Both the position numbers and the translations under genes were made by a program. A stretch of DNA of 63,645 bases, counting the filler, from Bigelowiella natans CCMP2755 (Eukaryota > Protista > Cercozoa), in the NCBI GenBank assembly GCA_000320545.1. It is 6 parts of 6 records of this genome, joined end to end, with 100 filler letters (N's around TTAATTAATTAA, not from the genome) between each part and the next. Parts side by side here need not be neighbours in the genome. Positions count along the whole stretch, not along the records: positions 1 to 24,244 come from ADNK01002406.1; 5 more parts are not named here. The stretch is one strand, 5' to 3'. The notes below the pieces were generated by a model. It did no database searches and was not told where the DNA came from. It was given only the letters and a program-made list of their open reading frames with translations. Below, one piece after another: positions 1 to 50,076 of the stretch (position 1 is the first letter of the stretch; each line of letters starts with the position of its first letter).

Positions 1-2301
1 TGCTTGACAGACCATTTTGTTAACGGATGCATCATTGAACGCCTTTAGCTCTTTTTATTGGAGGGGGAGCTCGGGAGAAAATGTGATTGATTGCATTGTT
101 CATGGCAACAATTTAGTTTTGTCGTTTTTCGAACAGGTTTGACACCACTCAGTTGGTGCAGCATCAACGGCCATCTTGAGATTGTCAAGCATCTTGTCAG
201 CATGAAGGCAGATATCGAGACGAAGGACAACAATGGTGAGTGGAATTAGGAGTGGCATTAGCAGTTGTGAGTGTAACTAGTATTCGCATTAGACATTGCT
301 ATGTGCTTGAGTTTGCCCAAATTCAGATGGTGATCATTTGGATTGTTGTCACCCCAAATTGCATTTTGCTTTACGGACTATTTAGTTGACGGATGCATCA
401 CTGAACGCCTTTAGCTGGTTTCATTGAGGGAGGGGGTGTGGACTTGGGAGAAAATGTGATTGATTGCATTGTTCATGGCAACTGTTTAGTTTTGCCATCT
501 TTTGAACAGGTGACACGCCACTCAATGGGTGCAGTTTTGAAGGCCATCTTGAGATTGTCAAGCATCTCATCAGCATGAAGGCAGATGTCGAGACGAAGGA
601 CAAGAATGGTGTGTGCAATTAGGAGTGGCATTAGCAGTTGTGAGTGCAACTAGCATCAGCATTGGACATTGCCATGTGCTTGAGTTTGCCCACATTCGGA
701 TGGAGATGATTGCAGATTGTTTTCACTGCAAAGTGCATTTTGCTTGACGGACCATTTGGTTGATGGATGCATCACAGAACGCCTTTGGCTCGTTTCATTG
801 AGAGAGGGGGGGTGGACTTGGGAGAAAATGTGATTGATTCCATTGTTCATGGCAACAATTTGGTGTGGCCTCTCTCGAACAGGTTGGACGCCACTCACTT
901 GGAGCAGTTTCAAAGGCCACGTTGAGATTGTCAAGTATCTTGTCAGCATGAAGGCAAACATCGAGACGAAGGACAACGATGGTGAGTGCAATTGGGAGTG
1001 GCATCAGAATTTTTTTTCCCCCGCAAATGGCATTTTGCGAGACGGATCATTTGGTGGATGCATCGCTAAACGCCATCATTGAAGATTTTAGGTCTTTTCA
1101 TTGGAGGGGGAGCTCGAGAGAAAATGTGATTGGTTGCATTGTTCATGGCAACAATTTAGTTTCGTCCTTTTTCGAACAGATTTGACACCACTAAGTTGGT
1201 GCAGCTTCATCGGTAATCTTGAGATTGTCAAGCATCTTGTCAGCATGAAGGCAGACATTGAGACGAAGGAGAATGGTGTGTGCAATTAGGAGTGGCATTA
1301 GCAGTTGTGAGTGCAACTAGCATCAGCATTAGACATTGCCATGTGCTTGAGTTTGCCCACATTCAGATGGTGATGATTGCAGATTGTTTTCACCGCAAAG
1401 TGCATTTTGCTTGACGGATCATTTGGTTGACGGATGCATCGCTGAACGCCTTTAGCTCGTTTCATTGAGGGAGAGGGGGTGGACTTGAGAGAAAATGTGA
1501 TTGATTCCATTGTTCTTGGCAACAATTTGGTTTTGTCGTTTTTCGAACAGGTTTGACACCACTCAGTTGGTGCAGCATCAACGGCCATCTTGAGATTGTC
1601 AAGCATCTTGTCAGCATGAAGGCAGATATCGAGACGAAGGACAACAATGGTGAGTGGAATTAGGAGTGGCATCAGAATTTTTTCCCCCCCGCAAATGGCA
1701 TTTTGCTTGACGGATCATTTGGTGGAGGCATCGCTAAACGCCTTTGGCTCGTTTCATTGAGAGAGGGGGGGTGGACTTGGGAGAAAATGTGATTGATTCC
1801 ATTGTTCATGGCAACAATTTGGTGTGGCCTCTCTCGAACAGGTTGGACGCCACTCACTTGGAGCAGTTTCAAAGGCCATCTTGAGATTGTCAAGCATCTT
1901 GTCAGCATGAAGGCAAACATCGAGACGAAGAACAACGATGGTGAGTGCAATTAGGAGTGGCATTGGCAGTTTTTGCACCGCAAAGTGATTTTTCCTTGAC
2001 GGATTATTTTTTGACGGATGCATCGCTAAACGCCTTTAGCTCGTTTCATTGAGGGAGGTGGGGGGACTCCGGGGAAATGTGATTGATTGCATTGTTCATG
2101 GCAACAATTTGCTTTTGCTCTCTTTCGAACAGGTGACACGCCACTCAGTTTGTGCAGCTTCAAAGGTCATCTTGAGATTGTCAAGTATCTTGTCAGCATG
2201 AAGGCAGATATCGAGGCGAAGGACAACAATGGTGTGTGCAATTAGGAGTGGCATTAGCAGTTGTGAGGGGACTAACATCAGCATTTGTTCATGGCAACAA
2301 T
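1..2301 (+). repeat. Tandem array of ankyrin exon + intron units (about 290-373 bp; 7 exons visible)
   Basis: Recurring blocks gagaaaatgtgattgatt.cattgttcatggcaacaat...gaacag|exon|gtg.gt.caattaggagtggca. Intron lengths are 274, 274, 198, 275, 192 and 192 nt. Confidence 0.95.
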
Positions 2302-4862
2302 ATCACAAGCATTGAGACTATAGTCGTGAGTCTCAATGTGGAGTTAGTGAATGGTAGTATGTTCTTCTCGGATGATTGAGTTTAGTGTTTGGAGTGGAAT
2401 TGTATTGTGAGTCGTGGCAGCTGAATGAGTAGTAATAATAGTGTCAAAGCTAAGTAGAGAACAAAATGCCGAAGAAGTGGTAGCGTAGGAAAAGATGGTC
2501 GATATTGAGGAATAAAGGATGATTGTGATGAAATGCATTGTATTTGTTGCATTTTTGTTTGTCTTTCAGGTAAGAGACCATTAGATAAGGCGGTAGAAGA
2601 GAACAATGACAATGTAGTGAACCATCTCCGCAATGAAACGACAAAGCTGGGCTTAGCGAAGATGAAGACCGAAAATAAAATCACAAACATTGCTAAGACG
2701 TTTTCAAGCGAAGGACTATGGACTTGTGCCAGGCTGTGCTTTCAAGGAAGTATCGCCGAGCTCAAAGACTTTGCTACAGCGAGATTTCCACGATTCTCCT
2801 TTCATTCGAAAATGGAAAAGGACGAATTGGTGCAGGCTTTAAAAAAACAAGCAATGGATGCGGTAACGGTTCGTTCCCTTAAAGATTGTTGCAGGAAATA
2901 TGGGATTAAGGGGTACTCTGGAAAAAACAAAGGAAAGCTGGGGCAGATGATTTTTGATGAAGCAACGTGTTCTATCCAAAGAAAGGTAAATGTCTGAATT
3001 TGTGAATGGAATCTAAATGGGTAGCATGCTTGGATGTTAGACATCAATTTATCTTGCTTCAGAGTTGTCCCGATCATCGATATTCAATGCAAATCTAAGA
3101 CAGTTCGTGCCTTTCTGATAGTCTAACAATGAACTAATGGAGTCGGATTCCGAGTCGGATTCCGATGATGAACCAATGGAGTCGGATTCCGAGTCGGATT
3201 CCGATTATGAACCAATGGAGTCGGATTTCGAGTCGGATTCCGATTATGAACCAATGGAGTCGGATTCCGATGATGAAGACGAACCAATCATCCGGTAGAA
3301 AGGCGCTAAGTGTTCACCAAGCAACATTTTTAAACGGAAATATAAATAGATCAAAGTCGGTGCCATCAAAGTCTGGTAAAAAGCGAGCAGAAGTGTCTAC
3401 AGTTGGAGAGTCTCTCGTTGCTAGACCCAGCAAAAAGGTCATTATTTCGAATGGCACTTGCAAAATATGCAACCAATTAGGATCACAAACGTGCTGCTGC
3501 TGCTGCTGCTGCTGTATCAGGCAAAACTTGGATCATATGAGGACAGCAAAGGGCAGGAAAATGGTGAAGAAGCTGAAAAATTTGAACGATTTCTCAAAGA
3601 AGCGCGTCTCTCTGAATTCGTGCAAACATTGCGTGAAGCTGGTTACGAGTATATCGATGATTTGCCCGAAATGGTGATGTTAATAATCTTGATATGAAGA
3701 GTAGTTTTTGGATATAATGTTAAGTAATCGTCCTATCGTTATAACATCTCAGGATAGTGATGAAAAGGAGAAGTTCTTTCCGAAAAAACCGCACCGTAGA
3801 AGGTTCGAAAAGGCGATCAAGGAAATGAAAAAGACCACTTCAGTGAAACCTAGCAAAAAGCCGAAACCTGTCATTGACCACAAGTTTGCATTAATTATCG
3901 GTAATGGAAAATACAGGAAAGGTCCATTGGGATCAAACCCTATCAATGATGCCCAAGTTATAAGAAACAAGTTTGAATCTGAGTACGGCTACAAAGTCTT
4001 CTATCATGAAAACCTGAAAAGTAAAGATATGAAAGATGCTCTTTATAAATTTGAAAAAGCACTCAAAAATGCAATCAAGGGGGGAGGCGAATCCCTAGCA
4101 GTTGTATTTTTCGCCGGTCATGGTGTCCTAACAACAACTGCGAACGGCTTGAGTGAAAATTTGCTTCTGGGTATCGATAACGTCGGTTATGAGGATGAAA
4201 GGTAGAGGTTATTGGCTCTTCGATTATCATTAAGTAACTGCATCTTCTTGTTGCAGGGATTTGCAAGTGAAAGAACTAAGTACCAAAGATGTAGTTACAG
4301 CCTTAGAAGAAGCAAAAGTCTCGATGAAAATCATGTTGCTGGATTGTTGTCGTGAAGTTTCAGGTATTCAAATCCATGTATCATCAACCACCTGCCAACC
4401 AACACAGCAACAATTTACCATCACATTAGGAATGCCACTTTCCGTGGTGAGCAAAAGTCGTTCGTTAGCGAAGAGTGGTTTGAAGATCCCAAGAGAAGAG
4501 GTGAAAGGATGCATGATACTCTACGCTTTTCAACCAGGTGAATTCATTTTTGAAAACGCAAAAAGATTCTTCGGGCAAAATAACACATTTCACCTGTGTG
4601 TGCTGTTTGCATGTTAGGCAAGCTAACTTCAAATGGAGATTATGAAAAGAAGAACGGACTCTTCACCGAATCGTTGATGGAAGCCTTCAAAAGCAGGAAG
4701 AATGAAAGGAATCCTCCAACATTCTGCGATCTCGTCAGTGAAGCTGGGAAAATCATGGAACATCACAATCAACAACCTGCTGTTGAAATTTCATGCGTGG
4801 GCCAGAGCATTTACATGTGCATCGATGGGACCCACTTCAAAGACTGGCACACGCTGCCGTAG
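137..4862 (+). CDS. Ankyrin-repeat / Rho-N(HeH)-like x2 / acidic repeat / SAM / caspase-like (peptidase C14, paracaspase-type) protein, 5' partial, multi-exon
   Basis: Ankyrin exons at 137-235, 510-608, 883-981, 1180-1275, 1551-1649, 1842-1940 and 2133-2231 (GxTPLxxxSxxGHLEIVKhLVSMKAdIETKD). Exon 2570-2985 has a capping repeat GKRPLDKA plus SIAELKDFA..KMEKDELVQAL and TVRSLKDCCRKYGIKGYSGKNK. Acidic exon ~3122-3294. SAM-like FERFLKEARLSEFVQTLREAGYEYIDDLPEM|DSDEKEKFFPKKPHRRRFEKAI. Caspase-fold motifs ALIIGNGKY..NPINDA, VFFAGHG (His), MLLDCCR (Cys), YAFQPG, NGLFTESL. GT-AG introns keep frame to the stop at 4860-4862. Confidence 0.88.
3130..3285 (+). repeat. Coding 36-bp repeat (EPMESDSESDSDD/Y) built from 12-bp GAGTCGGATTCC units
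   Basis: gaaccaatggagtcggattccgagtcggattccgat occurs about 4 times, in frame within the ankyrin-caspase gene. Confidence 0.85.
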
Positions 4863-5699
4863 CTGAAACGGCGAAGGGATGTGAAAGCCTTCAATATTAT
4901 CTTGCTAGCTTGTCAACACTATCTGAAAGAAGGCAACGGATGCATTCTGATTCTTTCTGTTCGCGGAAATGCAATGGACAAAATAAAAACAAAATAAGCA
5001 CAGAATGTCGAATGTGAGAAGTATGCGTTTGCGTGGTGTGCACAGCTGCATGCACACATGCAAAATGACAGACAACAAGGAATTTGATTTGTTTTTGCAT
5101 GCTAGCTTGTCTGTTGCCAAACATGATCGTGACATGACAAAGGCAACCCATGCGAAATGCCTCAAAGCCCGCCTTGCTAGCATGGCTCTCTAGCTCTGAG
5201 GTTGAGGTGGAACACGACTGCAGCTGGCGCTCGATCATGCTGCATGTGTGATTGTCAGGAGCATTCCAGCAAGCCAGAGCTCAATGGAACAGACTAGCAG
5301 ACCTCATCGAATGCCAACATGTGCAAACAACAAGGTACGGTAGCAAGTCGCTACAGATAGCTACCCTGGCGGTGCATGTTAGCATGCATGACGCCGTACC
5401 ATGCTAGCATGCTAGTATGCGTCTGCAATTACAAAATGCATTGTGGCGTGTGTCACGACAAACTCAAACGAATTTGTCTCATTTTTCCACATAACATGTT
5501 GACACGCATTGATGAATGTTCATGAAGATTCAGAAGACCAAGCCCCCTCTTTCCAAAATGACTGCAAAACAACCTGAAATGACAGAATATGGTCAGGAAC
5601 AAAAGAGCAAGATGTCCTTCATAGATAATATGGATAATGACTTTCAATTATCATGCTGATACCTCGATTACATAGAGTCTTTCCTCACAAAATCGAGCA

Positions 5700-13906: not shown

Positions 13907-16900
13907 GCACTACAAGCTGCAAGTCATGTTTCTATTTGCCAGCCACTGCAATTATTCCTCCTCCTCCTCCTCCTACTATGACGACGACCTTCCTTCGAGG
14001 TCAAGAGAATAGGGGATCTCCACGTGGTGAAGGTCCATAACCTTCCTATCATCGATTTCGTACACCGAGTAGCGTAGAAATGACTCCTTTGAGTTAACTA
14101 CCATAGAGAGCTTGTTATCCGTGATGCTCACCTGTCGCCGATTGTTGTTACGCAATAAGTGACGAGGCGGGAGGGGAAGGGGGGGGGGGGGGGGCGCTAG
14201 TAGTTTCTAGCTTCGAGGCTCGGAACATCTGTCTCGCCATGTTATAATGAGCGAGTGCGGACTTCACAATATTCGTTTTTTGGCATTTTTTGTGTGGTGA
14301 AATGTGGTGGACCTCTCCCGTCTTTGTCCGTTCCTTCTCCTCTAATTCTAACCGCTTCCTCTCCTCCTCCTCTTTCCTTCGCCTCTCCTCCTCCTCTTTC
14401 CTCCTCCTCTCCTCCTCCTCCTTGCGTTTTCTCTCTTCCTCCTCCCGCCGACGCTTCTCCTCGGCCTCTCGCTGCTGCATGGGTGGTGGTGGGGGAGGGA
14501 GGGGGGGGGAGGATGAGCAAACAAAACAAAGGAAAGGCAGAATTGAAAGCAGGGATTGGTTAGATGTTGGGGTGGAGGGCGCGGTGGAAGTCGGAGAGGC
14601 GGCACTATTACAGAGAACACTTTGGCGCCCATGTGAAAGCATTCATCGATACCCTTTTTTCTTCTAATGCTTTTATCCGAGCAGCTTCCTCTTCCTTGGC
14701 CTTTCTCTCTGCTTCTTCTCTCTCCTTCTTCTTCCTTGCCTCCTCCTCCTCGCGTTTCCTCTTCTCCTCCTCCTCCTGCTCTTTCCGCTTTCGCTCAGCT
14801 TCCTCATCTTCCTTCTTCTTCCTGGCCTCCTCCTCTTCCTGCTCTTTCTTTAGTTTTTCTAATCTCTCCTTCTCTGCAGCAGCAGCTGCAGCTTCTTCCT
14901 CCTTCTTCCTCAGTTCATCGGCTTCTCTCGCCTTTTTCTCTGCCTCTTCTCTCTCCTGATCGTATGCGAAAGTTTGTTCTAACATGTTCCCAGATCTCTT
15001 CACTTGAAAATGTGCCCCTATCCCCCCCCTAATCCTCCGCCCCTTCTCCAGGTTTGTGGTTATGTGGTCACCTTCTTCTCCGTCTCTTCTTTCGCTCGTT
15101 GCTCCTCGGACTGTTTAGCTTTCTCGGCGTCTTCTTTGGCCTTCTTTTCAGCGTCTTCTTTGGCCTTCTTTTCAGCATCTTCTTTGGCCTTTTTGGTCGC
15201 TTCATCCTCTCCGCCGCTTCCTTTCGCGTCAGCAGCTTCCTTTGCCGCTTTCTCGGCCTCCTCCTTCTTTTTCCTCTCCATTTCCTCTGCATCCTCAGGC
15301 TAAGCCGCACACACACAGGCGCACATATTTAAATATTTAAATATATATATTATGGTTCGTATATATTAATTCGTGGCGGAAATGCAGTGGGAGGAGAGAG
15401 TTGTCGAATACAATGAGTGGACCTTGTGGATGAAATCGCCTTCTTTCTCCATCAGCTTGCGCACTTTTGCCAACAGCTCCTCTTTCGGGGGTAGATCGTC
15501 GCGTATCTTGAGCAATTCTTCATATGCATCCTGTTTATTGGAGAAACAGCGCCTTTTTTGAAAGCATTGCTACTGCAGCAATAACAACGACTGCTACTAC
15601 ACTAACTCTACTGCTGCATAATAATGGCGGCGTTGTAGACGCAACAGTGGCGATTAATTCTCTCAATTAGGAAGCGGCAAATCGAAGGAGGACAACAAAC
15701 AGCTCCTTATCATTTCGTGAAAATGTCTGGTGGGTACCTCCGCACTGAGGTTTCTCTCGCGCATAAGAATCATGAGCGCCGTGAGAGCTGGCGCCTGGTT
15801 ATTTTCACTTCCCACGATCAAGACATTCCCTGTGGATTTCTCCTCTCCCCCCCCAGAGCCCTCTTCCTTTTTCCCTTCTTCGACCTTATCGCCTGGAAGG
15901 TAGAGCGGGGGGGGGGGGGGGGGGGTTAGAATATGTCTCGAAGTGGCGAAGAGTCACGCGGAAGGAAATCCAGTGTAAAGAGTAGGGTGTGTGCAGTATT
16001 GGCCTCATCATCAAAGTGCCATCCATAAAGAAGTGAAAAAGCAATGTTTTGACTAGTGCTAACGCTAGATGAGTACGAGGTGATTAAAATGATCGTGTGT
16101 TATCGACTGCTCCATCATCGTTGTCGTTGTCGTTGTATGTTGTTGGCCGCACCAAGGTCTTCCACGAGCTTCCTCGCACTCCCCCCATCTACGTTTCCGT
16201 CTTTATCTTGCAAATCCACCTGCTGAATATCTAATTTCGGCAGAATGGTCGCCCCCCCCCCTTCCTTTTCCTCCTTCTTGCTGCCCTCCTCCTTCTTGCT
16301 GCCCTCCTCCTTCTTGCCTCCCTCCTCCTTCTTGCTGCCCTCCTCCTTCTTGCCTCCCTCCTCCTTCTTGCCTCCCTCCTCCTTCTTGCCGCCCTCCTCC
16401 TTTTTCTCTTTGCCATCCATATTAACCACGGTGGAGATGTTAAGCTTCTTCATCTGCTCGTCAGTCACTTCTCCCTTCTTGGCGAGATAGAGGCCGGGGG
16501 CGACCTCCCCAGGGAACTTTTCCTTATTTTCCTCCCCAGGCTCTTTGCCCTCTGCAGTCAGGAAGCCGTAGCGCGCGACGAATTTGTCCATATCTGGAAA
16601 CACATCCGAGGAGAAATCAACAACAACAACAATAACAACAACAGCGACAACAAAAAATGTGATTGTCATCGAGAACGGGGGAAAACCCTCCTCCTCTCAC
16701 GCGCCGCAGCAGTGGAAGAATGGGACTGTTTCCTCGGTTGATACATTAGTGTGGATTGAGAAACGCGCTCGTGGGTGAGGATGAAGGCACGTTTATTGCA
16801 GCACCTTCAAAATAGGCAACTCTCTTCGCCCCCTCGCTGACGAGCAGCTCGCAAAGAGTCATTACTTCCTTCCTTCGATCTTTCAGCCCCACGACGACGA

Positions 16901-22834: not shown

Positions 22835-24244
22835 CTAAGGTTTCGTCGGCGACTTGCTATCGCCCTTGGAAGCAGCAGCAGCAGCAGCAGCAGCGGCTCT
22901 TTTGTTGATGACATCCACGGTCTCTTGCTTGAGTTCCCCAGAGCCGCCCCTCAGCTTCTTCCGCACGCTGGCATCGATTTGATAGCCGCCCACGATCTTC
23001 ATGAGCTCCTTGAATTCTGGGGAGAACTTAAACGGCCCCAGCTTGTCCTTCGAGATGAGGGAGATCACCTCTCCCTCCGACTCGACGAACGTCGAGGCCG
23101 AGGCATTGCTGCCCTCAACCTCCTTCATCACGCGCTTGGCCATCGAGGCGGAGATGTTCACTTGGCGGTCGCAGCCGGGGCGGATAAACCTCTCCATGAG
23201 CTGCGCGGCTTTCTCGTTGACCTTCTTCTGGTCGCGCTCGTCGCTCAGGTCCAGCGCCTTTGCCCACTTGCGGTAGGCGCGCGCCTCGTGCCAGAACTCG
23301 ATGCTCTCTTCCGCGTACTGCGATTTCAGGTACTGGGTGAAAAGCTCAATGCCTTTCGGGTGGTAGATGATTGAGCGGATTTGGCACTTCCTTCCGGCGA
23401 TCTTGAGCTCAACCTAGAGGGGGGGTTTGACGCGGGTGATGAGTGATAAATGCCAGGGATAGGGAAGAGGACGGCTGCGGTAGTGGTGGGGCATGAACGT
23501 ACCGAAACACAACTATCCTTATTTCATTACTTTTGTTGTATGTTATGTAGTGCGTGGTAAGTACGTCGGCGAGCGCCTCCGGTCTGTCAGCGAAGAACCC
23601 TCTAAAGTCCTTCCTGCTCATTGCCAGCAGCACTGTGCGTTTCGTCGTTCGCACGGTGGCAGTGCGGGACATATCGTCTATTACAATCGCCACCTCTCCA
23701 AAGTACCTTAGAGGAAGAAGAAGAAGAAGAAGAGGAAAAGTGGGAGAGAGGGGAGAGGGGGGGGGGGGGAAGGAGAAAAAAAAACCTGCTTATACTACTA
23801 CACGCATCTTCAATAGCACGGATGGCCAATGCTGTACGCGCGTCGCTATTCTCCTAGAAGTCACATCGCAACGCAGCTTACTACTTTCCCTGGCCGAGTC
23901 TGATGAGCGGCTTGCCCCCCACACTGACTGAGACCTCGCCGAGGTAGATGATGTAGAACTGCGTGCCCTGCTCCCCCTCCCTGAAGATAATCTCGTCGGC
24001 CTCGAAGCACTGCACGCGGCAGCTCAGCGCGAGCTGGCGGAAGGAGGACTGCCGGATGGCGTCAAAGAACGGGATGTTGTACTGGTGGAAGGTCCCGACG
24101 ATGCGCTCGCGCATAACCGAGTCCATATCGAGCCCGGCGACCTTCACGAATGCCTTGAACGTCCTCTCGTCGAGGGAGATGAGGATGCTGCGCGACTTGG
24201 CCATATCGTCGCGGTCCGCGGAATATTGGGCAGCATCAAGGAGA
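22835..24244 (-). CDS. Cyclic-nucleotide-binding domain(s) + RGS domain protein, 5' partial
   Basis: cNMP motifs IIFREGEQGTQFYIIYLGEVSV..LGQGK|YFGEVAIV..RTATVRT. RGS motifs GIELFTQYLKSQYAEESIEFW..ERFIRPGCDRQVNIS..LISKDKLGPFKFSPEF. Truncated by the spacer. Confidence 0.9.
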
Positions 24245-44075: not shown

Positions 44076-44402
44076 TAGGGTCGATATGTGCGATATCAAG
44101 CGATCCAGAGTTCTGTGTGTGCTTTGCACTATTCATCGCAGCATGTGGTGCTGCCATATTTTTCAATGAAAGTGTTGCAGCAGTTGCATCAGGAGTTGTT
44201 ATCTTACTTACTTCCGTTAGAACAATGTGGTAATTCTTATCTGGCTGCTTCTTCTTTCATAATATCTGTGTTGTGTGTGATAGGACATCATCATCATCAT
44301 CATCATCATCACCCATATTGCTATATCTATCTGTACTCGATGACACACCATCCAATAATAATACGCATTCTCCTATTTATCATCCAACCCAAATTTTTGG
44401 AG

Positions 44403-45076
44403 ATGATCACGGACGGAGAACGACGAGCTGATTCATCATATACCGCCAGGAACTATCTTCCCAATAAAGAAGCTAAGAACATCAAGGCTAAAGAGGAGGG
44501 GGAGGAAGGGACAGGAAAGCTAGCTGTGATTGATCAAAGTGCCCTGCGAATCCAGGTGATTGATTAGAGGGTCATGGCACTGAGGATATTAAATTGAACC
44601 TGAATCTCTTCTTCTTCTTCTTCATATTTGGCTCTCTTCTTCATTCAGGACATTCTCGTAAACATCATGTCATACCAAACTCTAGAGGATCGTGCTCGTC
44701 TTCGTGCAGTATCAAGAAGTGCAAGCAAAGCATATCATCGTCCGTGTTTGTGGATAGACACCTTAGTCCCGGACAGTTGCGGTTCCATTAATCTTGCAGT
44801 GAAAGCTATTCCAAAATCACTTTCTAGCCTTTACCCTAAATTTATCCCAAAGATAAGGGTGAGGGCGGATATGACTTATTATGAAGGAGACTCACGTGGA
44901 TTATCAGTCCTTTTCAAGCGAAGACCGAGTGGAATATACGTTGATAAACCTGTTATCATCGAAGCATTCATGATGATGAAGAAAAAGGAAGAGCTAGTAG
45001 ACGAAAAAAAGGAACATGAGGTGGTGGCAAGTGAGATGAAAGACCCCGCTGGGAAACAAACAGTAGCAGCAACTCT

Positions 45077-45109
<33 letters not shown>

Positions 45110-46319
45110 TTGTGTCAGGATTCATAGTAGTGCTGGTGAGGCTATAACCGTTAGCAAAAATGCCAGAGGAGCCCAGCTGATAGGAATTGACGTGTATATA
45201 AATCGATTCTCTAGCCATGGAATTGCCGTGTATGCCGACAATGTAAAAATAAAGAATTGTAGGATATCTGCTCAGGGAACAAACGCATGCGGTGTCTTAG
45301 TAGCAGGTAGGTGTAGATAGGTAGTAGTTAGTACTACCACACCTGCTTGTTGTAACAGCAGAACAACTAAATCTTGCACGATTCTATTCAATTTCTTTTC
45401 TCTCGTCGCATTGTACGTATTGATAACTGCTCAATCCTCCTCTTTTGATCGTTGTTGTCTTTCCTCGAATCCCCCCCGGAATATAACTGTACATCATCAT
45501 CCTCCTCTCTCATAATAACAGGTAGGAGTGTGAGTAGCTTAGAATCTTGTGAAATCACAGACTGTGGAGGATCTGGAGTCCTTCTTGCTTACAATGCCGG
45601 AGTCCATGTTGAGCACTGTTCAATAAAAAACAATCAATGGAGTGGCATAGGTAGTAGTAGGACGAGATAAAAAAGAAAGAAGAAGGATCAAGAGGAGGGT
45701 GGGAAAAAAAAAGTAATTTAGATGTTTAGTTTAAGAAATCGACGGGACATGGGAGGCGGCAGAAGAAATATAGGATATTCAATTACGGATATCACAGTTC
45801 TATCATATCAATCAAAATTTATGATGACTGTTACTAATGCGCTTTCATCATCCAATTTGGATCTTCCGCATATATATTTGAGCAGCACCATATTAATTAA
45901 TTAACTAATTAATGTATGTTAGGGGCTTTTGCTGGGTCATCCCTGTCTATCCAAGACACATGCATTGAGAACAATGCTCTATTTGCAGTTGGTGCCGCAG
46001 TAGATGTCACTTGTAACCTTTCTTCAGGTTGTTGTTGTTGTTGTTGTTTACGAGGAGGAGGAGGATATGATTGCATTCATAGATGTAGAAGGAGTAGTTG
46101 TTGCAGTCATACGATCACTCATATTTGTAGTAGTATTCATTTTCTTCTAATTTAACTTGAACTTATTGCTGCCTGTTGAAATTCGATTGCCTTTCATCAA
46201 GGATGAATTTGCATTCAAAAGACTAATTCTAAAATACACTTTGTGGATCAGGGAACACATTCCAAGGCAATGGTCGTGGCGATTCAGTTCATCGATATTT
46301 GGCATATGAGCATTCTTAA
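44403..46319 (+). CDS. F-box + parallel beta-helix (PbH1/CASH, FBXO11-like) protein
   Basis: F-box-like DILVNIMSYQTLEDRARLRAVSR..W; beta-helix repeats VKIKNCRIS, LESCEITDCGGSGVLL, VEHCSIKNNQWSGI, IQDTCIENNALFAV; last exon GNTFQGNGRGD..HS*. Confidence 0.8.
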
Positions 46320-46558
46320 CCAAAGTACCTCTAGATACTATCATGGCAATATTTATATTGCTCTAATACCTTGAGGGGTTATCATGCGTTGATGAATAGA
46401 TGCGTGCATGTACGCAGATAGTTCGGCTTGTACATATCTAGATATATGCCGCACAACCCGCAAAGCTGCGCGCAAAGCACGACATGCTAGACCAAATCAC
46501 AATGCATTTTCATGCATGCAACATGTGACCAAGGAAACAAACAGACACAATTTATGCG

Positions 46559-47763
46559 CTGTAGCCGCTGCATTGCACAGCTACATTAGGATGACCACTG
46601 AAAAAATTTGAACATTCATTACATCCGTCTCATCATGATTATAGACATGCAATACATTACACATATAATATATATATTGTATTGCTGTGTCTATCATCAT
46701 GTGTCGCACAACTCGCGCATGTGAGACGGATGTATGAATGATACAATAATTAAATCTTTTCAATTTTCATCTCAACAAAGCTGTGCAAAGCAGCGGCTCA
46801 CGCATGTTGTAAAACTAGACATGTGCACATAGCATAACCAATTAGCGCGGCGCCGCTGCGTGCGCATGTGTAGCATGTGCACTGCACTGCATGCAAGCAC
46901 CAGTCATTGCAAATTGTCATTAGCATCATTTGCCATCGCTAGATCGGCTATTGTTCTAGGAGGCATGACAAGAGACAGGTACATGCTTGGTCTCTTGCCT
47001 TGCACTCCATGCCTAAAAACGTTTTTTGAGCACATGGCCATTCATAACTCCACGTACGTGTACCAACCAAACTATAAAACACATGCACATGTGCTAGTTG
47101 CATGTACTTGGTCTCTGCCATTGCGGAGATACTACCTTGATGACTAATGACTCTCGTACGACTAGACGATCGACGCACTCTTGTGCATCTACTACAGACG
47201 CGTCTGTTACATAAATCGCCTACGATGGCAGGTGCACAGAAAACCAGCACTAGTTAGCACTAGAGTAGCCACCAGGCACTGCTAGCTAGCTAGCTAGGTG
47301 CACCAATGCAATGCAGCAGTGTTTAGCTACATGTGTGTCTCACTTAACACCCAGCTACACAATGGCAGCACATAAAATGCAACCTAAATTGCATGCTACA
47401 TGGATGTACAGATGCGTACCGCACACAACAAGATGTGGATCATTTGCTTTCTTGCGTATTGTACACCACATGCATCAACGCCGCTTGAGGAGCCAGCTAG
47501 CCAGCGCACTGCCATATTATAGTGATGCGCGACAACGAAACGAAAAGATTGACTTGCGATAAGAAGGAAACACGCACTGCTGCGCGAAATTATGCGCGCC
47601 ATTCGATCAAAACCGAAACTGTATGCATTTGACTTTTAATTGCATGAAACACATCATAGTGGAGACCACCAGATTCAACATTATTAGCCCTGTAGCCGCT
47701 GCATTGCACAGCTACATTAGGATGACCATTGAACAAATTTAATTTGATTCATTACATCCGTCT
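46559..47763. repeat. Pair of ~70-bp direct repeats (46559-46630 and 47690-47763)
   Basis: ctgtagccgctgcattgcacagctacattaggatgacca.tgaa.aaattt..attcattacatccgtct occurs twice, about 1.13 kb apart. Confidence 0.85.
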
Positions 47764-48026
47764 TACAACAATGTGTCCATGTTCGTACAAAATTGTTCTT
47801 TCATCGCTAAATGCTGTTAGCGCTTTACCTTTTGAATTGACAAAATGTGTTCGCACAGCCTAACAAGTTGTACGCATGCTACGTGTACGCACATGTGGGT
47901 ATAATTGATGACATAATATTGTACTCATAAGCTGGTGCATGTATACGCTGGCTTGCCTAACACAACTACATCGCAATTGAAAGTCACAGTTTTATAACGT
48001 AAAAGAGGTGCGGGGATAGGCGGATC

Positions 48027-48246
48027 CTAAGCAGCATATCGTCTTTCACGGCATGGCTGCTGCAACTTTCGCACCCCCACGTCTCTTCCCCCCTGATTTA
48101 GTTTTCTTCGGAGCCTTGGTAGTTTTCTGGCTCACGTTGATAAATTGACCGGGTACTCCATACTCATGCGATAAATATCTGGAGAATATGTATTTGGAGA
48201 ATATGTATTGACGTGAAAGCAATCAATAAGGAGGGCCTCATCAACC

Positions 48247-48289
<43 letters not shown>

Positions 48290-48990
48290 TTACGATATCT
48301 CTGTATACACAACAATAGTAACCCCTACTCTCACCCTTTGATTTCGTTGAGCAAGTTTCCCTGAGCTTGTACCATCTTTATGAGGATTAGGGGGAAAAGA
48401 AGAGCATTCATAACTATCCTTTAAAATTATTTAAGCTAAACTACAAAATTAAGTAGTAAACACACATTATATAACAACCGTGCGTGTAGATGAAGTGCAG
48501 TTTTTAATGCTAAATCATGTTCAACGAGTGAATCTATTGTTATAATCATATTCAACGAGTGTTTAATAATAATCTATGGTTACTTATTATTAAAGTGCTG
48601 GAAATCATCATCACCACCACCACCACCACCACCACCACTTCTACCATCAATACCTGAATATCCTTTTTTTGTTTACTCCTTGAGACCGTACTCGTCGTTG
48701 TGGAGCAAGCATGCTTCTTCCTGACCATGGAAGCTAGCTCTTTGGCTTCGATTTCCCATGGCTGAACAAAGTAATTCATCATCATCATCATCATCAACAA
48801 CAACAACAATAACAACCAAACGATGAGTGGGCTTTGTTTTTATGAGTTGTTGCTACATGCATGCACGTATGTATGTACACACATTTAGACTAATTATATT
48901 AAAAAATATTTCCCACTACAACAATACTACTACTACTACTACTATTACTATTACTATTACTATGTAATCCATCTATCTACTCATGTTATT

Positions 48991-49023
<33 letters not shown>

Positions 49024-50076
49024 TTGTTGTTATTATCATGATTGTTTCTTACCTCAAGTCCTTCCACTAGGGTTACCACCTTGTTTCCTTGTCGAGCACC
49101 CTAAAATACATACAATACTATTACTTACTCCTCCCATTGCTACCACTGCTACAACAATTACTACTACTACTACTACTACCAATACTACCTATTCAACAAC
49201 ACTCACAGCAACAAATACACAACAGAAAAAAAGCATCTATATTGAAGGCAGCATTCTCATGATGATATGCATGTGAACACAATGATGCAATTATTATTTC
49301 ACATATTCGTAGTAGTAGTAGTAGTAGTAGTAGTAGAAGTAGTAGTAGTAGTAGTAGTAGTAAAGATATATGCTGAATTGACCAGGCAAAGCAATATCTC
49401 AGGTGGTGAACCTGGGTTATTATTTAATGGTTGGCAGACAACAAGAATAATTAGTAGGAGAGATAGTATTTGTTTAATAGTTTGTTTGATAGTTTGATGG
49501 TTGATATTGGTAGGAGAGATAGTGTTTGTCTGATAGCTTGTTTGATAGTTTAATGGTTGATATTGGTAGGAGAGATAGTATTTGTTTAATAGTTTGATGG
49601 TTGATATTGGTAGGAGAGATAATTTTTTTTTGATGGTTTGATGGTTCTCAATTGTATGTATGTATGTATGTATGTATGTATGTAGCTCTCCAATAAAGTA
49701 AATTAGGACAAAGAAAACCGTCGATGATATCATTAATTAAAACAAAAATCGTCCATGTTTGTTTCCCCCATTCACTAGAGCGGCGGAATAGTTAGTGCTT
49801 GAAAACTTAATGAAGTAGAGATCTAGTTCATGGATGATGATGACGAATATCACGACGAGAAGGAAAATATCACTTGTCATTAAAACTCTCCATGGTACAG
49901 CATTATATACTGATTACCTGGTTTGTACATTGACTCATCAAGTTCTTCTTCTCTATCATCTTCGAATAGAATACAATGGTATATCTGGTAGTCGTAGTAG
50001 TAGTAGTAAGAGGAGGAGAAGCAGAAAGAACGATAGTTTAATAGTGATATTTTTATATAGATATTGATACACGCAT

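What the first reader, a model, noticed from the sequence alone, without database searches (positions are those of the whole stretch)
137..2231. One-ankyrin-per-exon cassette array varying at binding-surface residues (a natural DARPin-like library)
Seen: seven exons of 99 nt (one of 96 nt) each encode exactly one ankyrin repeat. All are phase 1-1, so any can be skipped, duplicated or swapped in frame. The framework TPL..G[H/N][L/V]EIVK.L.SMKA is nearly fixed. Variation is concentrated in the residue before TPL (L/D/W), helix 1 (SWCSIN, NGCSFE, TWSSFK, SWCSFI, SLCSFK) and the beta-turn (DNN/DKN/DND/EN/NND). Known: these positions form the ankyrin ligand groove randomised in DARPins, and repeat-per-exon shuffling is described for brown-algal LRR-ROCO and NB-ARC-TPR genes. 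Inference: a diversifying recognition module under pathogen-driven selection.
Basis: partly seen in the sequence, partly recalled or inferred. Interest (0 to 1): 0.85.

Follow-up and report, generated by a model that had tools for sequence, protein, structure and literature searches.

The report
Shuffled ankyrin-exon sensor fused to paracaspase
In the single-celled marine alga Bigelowiella natans, a gene builds its binding surface from near-identical one-repeat exons that swap sequence and differ between isolates, and joins it to a clustering domain and a caspase-like protease; it looks like a fast-evolving immune-type sensor, and about 30 similar exon arrays lie elsewhere in the genome.

Summary
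Observation confirmed: seven phase 1-1 exons (99/96 nt), one ankyrin repeat each, with homologous introns. They are the middle of an expressed Bigelowiella natans gene. The 5' exons lie on another contig. The 3' exons encode a SAM domain and a MALT1-like paracaspase with an intact His/Cys pair (808 aa open frame in the window). The units are recombinant mosaics: exon 1 equals exon 5 inside different introns. Change concentrates at binding-groove codons (permutation P=0.0001-0.01). dN/dS above 1 is significant in two paralogous arrays (2.9-6.9) but not in this one alone (1.4-1.9). Transcripts from apparently other isolates carry ankyrin exons absent from the reference contigs, while their protease exons are 99-100% identical. 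At least 29 contigs hold spaced ankyrin arrays. Exon skipping is not shown: the apparent skips are explained by duplicated exons. Best reading: a sensor-SAM-protease switch diversified by unequal crossing-over and gene conversion, like brown-algal LRR/TPR exon arrays and fungal high-conservation NLR repeats, but without an NTPase. Ligand and immune role are inferred, not shown.

The parts
137..235 (+). ANK exon 1 (phase 1-1); identical to exon 5 over a 143-nt tract (21 nt upstream + exon + 23 nt downstream)
   Evidence: RNA joint 235>510
510..608 (+). ANK exon 2
883..981 (+). ANK exon 3 (96% identical to exon 6; 142-nt identical tract across the acceptor)
1180..1275 (+). ANK exon 4 (96 nt, one codon short in the beta-turn)
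1551..1649 (+). ANK exon 5 (= exon 1)
1842..1940 (+). ANK exon 6
2133..2231 (+). ANK exon 7
1..2285 (+). tandem exon+intron units (period 291-373 bp), introns homologous; array cut by the contig start
2570..2985 (+). exon 8: capping ANK half-repeat plus basic helical region with a weak Rho_N-like match
   Evidence: Pfam Rho_N E=0.016, 3.5e-4 in a paralogue
3122..3294 (+). exon 9: acidic linker with a 39-bp tandem repeat (3.6 copies; one copy fewer in transcript L043)
3350..3437 (+). exon 10: basic linker
3521..3673 (+). exon 11: N-terminal part of the SAM domain
   Evidence: tankyrase SAM Z 9.2, rmsd 1.6 over 62 residues
3753..4201 (+). exon 12: end of SAM and first half of the paracaspase; pocket Asp codon 3948-3950, catalytic His codon 4119-4121
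4257..4363 (+). exon 13: paracaspase, catalytic Cys codon 4348-4350 (second Cys of DCCR)
4430..4537 (+). exon 14: paracaspase
4618..5020 (+). exon 15: paracaspase end, stop 4860-4862, 3' UTR, poly(A) at about 5020

Best explanation
The array is the variable sensor end of an ankyrin-SAM-paracaspase protein of Bigelowiella natans. Shown: gene structure, expression, open frame, SAM and MALT1-like folds, catalytic residues, mosaic repeat units, groove-biased change. DNA mechanism (partly shown): because each exon+intron unit is in frame and the introns are homologous, unequal crossing-over adds or removes whole repeats, and short gene-conversion tracts copy exons or parts of exons between units. 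Framework and introns are homogenised while selection keeps groove codons different, so isolates carry different repeat sets. Protein mechanism (inferred from MALT1, caspases, tankyrase and SARM1): the ankyrin groove binds a changing ligand, most plausibly a viral or other parasite protein; SAM domains then cluster the protein; proximity dimerises and activates the protease, which cuts after Arg/Lys and triggers a defence or cell-death response.
For: Open 808-aa frame with RNA-confirmed introns and poly(A). SAM + paracaspase model pLDDT 86.5; MALT1 best match, Z 24, Foldseek 1e-12; SAM Z 9.2. His, Cys and both acidic pocket residues align with MALT1. Mosaic units P=0.0002 and a 143-nt identical tract centred on exons 1/5. 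Groove omega 4.9-6.9 in C891 (P=5e-4 to 1e-5) and 2.9-3.5 in C1996 (P=3e-3 to 5e-4). In C891 10/14 groove sites vary against 23/290 intron sites and 8/32 third positions. Transcript L043: 3 differences in 1724 non-ANK bases but a repeat exon 6/99 from any window exon and 5 repeats instead of at least 9. Transcript L044: last ANK exon at most 92% identical to C1996 exons, SAM/protease exons 99-100%. Birth-and-death family: six loci with the protease, one lacking the catalytic Cys, one truncated. Chlorarachniophytes have giant viruses with host-strain-specific resistance (PMC13196603) and B. natans carries 38 virophage-like inserts (PMC6723459).
Against: No ligand, substrate, infection response or phenotype is known. 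In the window array alone omega is 1.4-1.9, not significant. Groove positions are the least constrained in any ankyrin, and recombination inflates tree-based selection tests. The 7-codon set was chosen after seeing the sequences; the 6-codon DARPin set was not. The two transcripts are short-read assemblies of unknown strain, so repeat number may be collapsed, and the new exon of L043 could lie in the unsequenced gap of the reference. An intronless paralogue (C3197) shows similar groove bias, so exon modularity is not required. Only 3 exon arrays are tied to the protease; the output of the other 26 or so is unknown.
Confidence: 0.6

Rival explanations
1. Neutral tandem duplication and relaxed constraint: an exon+intron unit expanded by slippage or unequal crossing-over, and surface residues drift because they are free to. 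No arms race.
For: Window omega not significantly above 1; groove versus third positions P=0.09; the genome holds at least 1345 Ank candidates, many in homogeneous intronless arrays; several paralogues are broken.
Against: Omega far above 1 in C891 and C1996; C891 introns only 3.5% apart while groove codons differ at pN 0.45; framework conserved (dN/dS 0.26 in the window); the same codons vary in five arrays; gene intact and expressed.
Confidence: 0.15
2. A Dscam-like or brown-algal-like splicing library: each cell makes many isoforms by skipping cassette exons, and this is the main source of diversity.
For: All exons symmetric and in frame; transcript L043 goes from a 5' exon type to exon 6 without exons 1-4; splice variants are reported for brown-algal ROCO LRR exons (PMC11378527).
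Against: No unambiguous skip joint: both candidates are explained by duplicated exons; the raw-read run covered only the 3' end; exon-skipping rates in B. natans are disputed and reported to lack frame-preserving bias (PMC6142364); skipping only shortens the array and gives no new surfaces per repeat.
Confidence: 0.12
3. A diversifying recognition protein with a non-pathogen job: self/non-self or mate recognition, prey or symbiont sensing, or a tankyrase-like substrate adaptor that targets the protease to cellular proteins.
For: ANK-SAM-enzyme is the tankyrase layout (tankyrase SAM best SAM match); fungal high-conservation repeat NLRs act in allorecognition (PMC13449251); B. natans is mixotrophic.
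Against: Adaptors for fixed cellular substrates do not normally show omega above 1 or isolate-level exon turnover; no evidence for allorecognition here.
Confidence: 0.13

Closest known systems
Brown-algal LRR-ROCO and NB-ARC-TPR genes (Zambounis 2012, PMC3341825; Teng 2024, PMC11378527)
   Same: One repeat per symmetric exon, tandem arrays, positive selection on the binding face, inactivated exons and pseudogenes, candidate immune receptors.
   Different: Ankyrin rather than LRR/TPR; SAM-paracaspase rather than ROC-COR or NB-ARC; unicellular rhizarian; introns duplicated and homogenised with the exon; alternative splicing not shown; no inverted intronic exon copies looked for systematically.
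Fungal NLRs with high-internal-conservation WD40/ANK/TPR repeats (HNWD; PMC13449251)
   Same: Near-identical repeats with a few hypervariable binding positions, repeat-number polymorphism, repeat exchange, cell-death-type effector.
   Different: No NACHT/NB-ARC domain; repeats are separate exons; sensor is N-terminal.
MALT1 paracaspase and bacterial caspase-like (orthocaspase) proteins
   Same: Same fold (Z 24), His-Cys pair, acidic pocket residues; nearest sequence relatives are 27-36% identical DACR-type proteins, the one named being from a Comamonadaceae bacterium.
   Different: No death or Ig domains; SAM and ankyrin instead. Bacterial-type ANK+caspase proteins exist but lack SAM and appear to be separate fusions.
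Tankyrase (ANK-SAM-PARP) and SARM1 (ARM-SAM-TIR)
   Same: Repeat sensor, SAM clustering domain, enzyme output, in that order.
   Different: Protease output; hypervariable exon-modular repeats; SAM polymerisation not tested.
DARPins (designed)
   Same: Fixed ankyrin framework with variation at beta-turn and first-helix positions; strong sequence matches to DARPin structures.
   Different: Natural; the TPLH His position varies and one DARPin-randomised position is fixed; no evidence of a per-cell library.

Membership tests
Brown-algal-type shuffling repeat-exon receptors | each repeat on its own equal-length, same-phase exon | tested here: met
Brown-algal-type shuffling repeat-exon receptors | DNA-level exon duplication, loss and exchange | tested here: met
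   mosaic test and identity tracts; differing transcripts
Brown-algal-type shuffling repeat-exon receptors | positive selection on the ligand face | tested here: inconclusive
   significant in C891 and C1996, not in the window array alone; recombination caveat
Brown-algal-type shuffling repeat-exon receptors | alternative splicing of repeat exons | tested here: inconclusive
   joints ambiguous; raw reads cover only the 3' end
ROCO / NB-ARC-TPR / NLR (STAND) | ROC-COR, NB-ARC or NACHT NTPase domain | tested here: not met
   none in the 808-aa model or in P0151; extreme N-terminus unknown
Paracaspase (MALT1-like, peptidase C14) | caspase fold closest to MALT1 | tested here: met
Paracaspase (MALT1-like, peptidase C14) | His-Cys pair and acidic S1 residues | tested here: met
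   AGHG, DCCR and NPINDA align with MALT1 motifs
Paracaspase (MALT1-like, peptidase C14) | dimerisation-dependent, Arg-specific activity | not testable with these tools
   needs an enzyme assay
MALT1 orthologues | death domain and Ig domains | tested here: not met
SAM domain | five-helix SAM fold | tested here: met
   Z 9.2, rmsd 1.6, many SAM hits; weak Pfam SAM hits
SAM domain | head-to-tail polymerisation | not tested
   not assessed

The most novel reading that the evidence does not exclude
A unicellular alga keeps a genome-wide repertoire of about 30 ankyrin exon-cassette arrays that exchange repeats fast enough (between loci, within clonal lineages, or by combinatorial splicing) to act as a variable receptor system against giant viruses, with a SAM-clustered paracaspase as the death or defence switch.
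Probability: 0.2. Interest if true: 0.9.

Novelty: new variant of a known kind. Interest (0 to 1): 0.64.

Why it matters
How protists recognise viruses is largely open. This gives a concrete candidate receptor family with a predicted enzyme output, in a sequenced alga whose group now has cultured giant viruses with host-strain-specific resistance (PMC13196603), so allele-versus-resistance tests are possible. It extends one-repeat-per-exon diversification from brown algae to Rhizaria and to ankyrins, as an independent origin. I found no paper describing an ANK-SAM-paracaspase protein or these arrays in the searches run (the library lacks most subscription papers), and the JGI model Bigna1/90136 omits the ankyrin exons.

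Tried and rejected
Assembly collapse: rejected (single-copy depth, distinct introns seen in independent runs). Skip joints as proof of alternative splicing: rejected. Pseudogene: rejected once intron 3438-3520 was placed. Single-sequence structure of P0151: unusable, pLDDT 43, so variable sites were placed by ankyrin consensus numbering (own knowledge) and PDB sequence matches, not on a model. Linker search found nothing. Ankyrin-region protein search gave only generic ankyrins, no outputs for the other arrays. IQ-TREE codon runs gave no omega; I wrote a two-class codon model instead. Earlier findings were not open. My spliced model was translated only locally and not sent joined to any search; exons were searched by reference and the database protein P0151 stood in for the joined form. 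Horizontal origin of the protease was not tested with a tree.

Full report
Observation. Exons 1 and 7, the two scanned, pass the Pfam Ank cut-off. Exons are 81-100% identical and the introns are homologous, so the repeated unit is exon plus intron, 291-373 bp. Contigs from an independent DNA run match unique parts of the array without differences at depth 62-76, against 76-82 for the 3' part of the gene, so the array is not a collapse.

Organism and gene. The 3' part is JGI model Bigna1/90136 of Bigelowiella natans, which leaves out the ankyrin exons. RNA contigs and a transcript (L043) define eight further exons to a stop at 4860-4862 and poly(A) near 5020. The spliced window part is one open frame of 808 aa. 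I translated it only locally; the joined model was not sent to any search. The contig starts inside the array. The first 446 bases of L043 match the end of contig C1332, which holds two older ankyrin exons, so the reference gene has at least nine full repeats. RNA contigs of two runs show one more exon variant, and the DNA run one more intron variant, neither present in the window; these probably lie in the gap (inference). The start codon is not found.

Output end. After a capping half-repeat come a basic helical region (weak Rho_N match), an acidic linker, a SAM domain and a peptidase C14 domain. A model of SAM plus protease has pLDDT 86.5. Its best structural match is human MALT1 paracaspase (Z 24, rmsd 3.0 over 218 residues; Foldseek 1e-12), and residues 12-74 match tankyrase SAM (Z 9.2, rmsd 1.6) and many other SAMs. 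The His of AGHG (4119-4121), the second Cys of DCCR (4348-4350) and two acidic residues align with MALT1's catalytic and pocket motifs, which predicts cleavage after basic residues (from knowledge of MALT1). Among 1.8 billion representatives only four hits exceed 65% identity, all matching this genome's family; the rest are DACR-type proteins, 27-36% identical over the domain for those aligned. A bacterial source is plausible but untested.

Family. Six loci carry the protease (C1331, C891, C1996, C3197, C2135, C2601). C891 and C1996 have one-ankyrin exon arrays of about 410 bp period with introns unrelated to the window's; C3197 has an intronless array in frame with the linker; C2601 has an intronless array nearby and lacks the catalytic Cys; C2135 is truncated in its transcript. 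A search with one exon gave 478 candidates; among the 150 scored, 29 contigs have repeats spaced more than 130 nt apart, with recurring periods of about 179-182, 256 and 410 bp. I could not read most of them, so their exon structure is inferred from spacing and short open frames, and their output domains are unknown.

Variation. Nonsynonymous change concentrates at groove codons in all five arrays tested (window permutation P=0.0001 for seven groove codons, 0.011 for the six DARPin-randomised ones; framework dN/dS 0.26). That alone is expected of any ankyrin. The stricter test, a two-class codon model, gives omega 1.4-1.9 for the window (P=0.25, 0.08), 4.9-6.9 for C891 (P=5e-4, 1e-5) and 2.9-3.5 for C1996 (P=3e-3, 5e-4). 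Recombination can inflate such tests, but the tree-free count agrees for C891: 10/14 groove sites vary against 8/32 third positions (P=0.004) and 23/290 intron sites. So positive selection is supported for the family and only suggestive for this array.

Shuffling. The window units are mosaics: 46% of informative site pairs are incompatible, neighbours far less so (P=0.0002); exons 1 and 5 share a 143-nt identical tract centred on the exon while their flanking introns differ by 15-18 sites. Window exons group together in a tree, apart from C891 and C1996, whose exons intermix, consistent with homogenisation within and between close loci. Transcript L043 differs from the reference at 3 of 1724 non-ankyrin bases, which two RNA runs matching the reference do not show, so it is probably another isolate. 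It has five repeats, one of which is 6/99 bases from any window exon, with four amino-acid changes. Transcript L044 of the C1996 paralogue likewise has a last ankyrin exon at most 92% identical to reference exons, while its SAM and protease exons are 99-100% identical. Both are short-read assemblies of unknown strain, so repeat counts are uncertain.

Splicing. The skip-like joints 234>882 and 607>1841 are expected from ordinary splicing, because exon 1 equals exon 5 and exons 3 and 6 share their first 37 nt. The raw-read run covers only the 3' end. A splicing library is therefore neither shown nor excluded.

Mechanism. Most likely (0.6): homologous in-frame units let unequal crossing-over and gene conversion rewrite the binding surface, selection keeps groove residues diverse, ligand binding clusters the protein through SAM, and proximity activates the protease to start a defence or death response. 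Structure, expression, mosaicism and groove bias are shown; ligand, activation and immune role are inferred. Context fits: giant viruses with host-strain-specific resistance infect chlorarachniophytes (PMC13196603) and this genome holds 38 virophage-like inserts (PMC6723459). Rivals are neutral expansion (0.15), a non-pathogen recognition role (0.13) and a splicing library as the main source of diversity (0.12).

Comparison and verdict. It works like brown-algal LRR-ROCO and NB-ARC-TPR exon arrays (PMC3341825, PMC11378527) and fungal high-conservation-repeat NLRs (PMC13449251), but is not a member of either, having no NTPase domain. The layout resembles tankyrase and SARM1. No paper on these arrays or on an ANK-SAM-paracaspase turned up in the library searched. 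Verdict: real, a new variant of a known kind, interest 0.64.

Noticed in passing
window 3129-3270: 39-bp coding tandem repeat (acidic linker); transcript L043 has one copy fewer, so it is probably length-polymorphic.
   Followed up: partly
window about 4520-4537: Reference reads YAFQPG where the four complete paralogues checked and transcript L043 read YACQPG; effect on activity unknown.
   Followed up: no
L041 (C1332) 1932-4400: A second, older ankyrin exon array (5 exons) followed by a SAM-like exon with a stop, just upstream of this gene's 5' exons; contig C1330 holds a further array of at least 12 repeats at 44158-49031. Possibly a local cluster.
   Followed up: partly
L032/L033 (C1996): Two tandem ankyrin-exon genes, one apparently without SAM-protease; one array exon carries a 1-nt deletion near its end, like the inactivated exons of Ectocarpus arrays.
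   Followed up: partly
L039 (C1688) and L040 (C1432): SAM exon pairs without a protease hit; duplicated in tandem 303 bp apart in C1688.
   Followed up: no
G000 C356, C358, C873, C2052, C3236, C3237, C3558 and others: Many long intronless ankyrin arrays, often with a 102-nt period; at least 1345 Ank candidates in the genome.
   Followed up: no
L036 (C2135) 1259-2500: ORFs a few kb upstream of the truncated paralogue, one resembling a GIY-YIG endonuclease by eye; possibly a viral or mobile insert. Not tested.
   Followed up: no
L043 1-370: Transcript keeps intron sequence before and between the two 5' ankyrin exons (partial splicing or cryptic acceptor), which breaks the frame in that assembly.
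   Followed up: partly
window 22835-24204, minus strand: Exons with RGS and cyclic-nucleotide-binding domain matches; an unrelated signalling gene.
   Followed up: partly
window 14148-16669, minus strand: Glu/Lys-rich low-complexity exons with an 18-bp tandem repeat (16269-16402); no Pfam match for the one tested.
   Followed up: no
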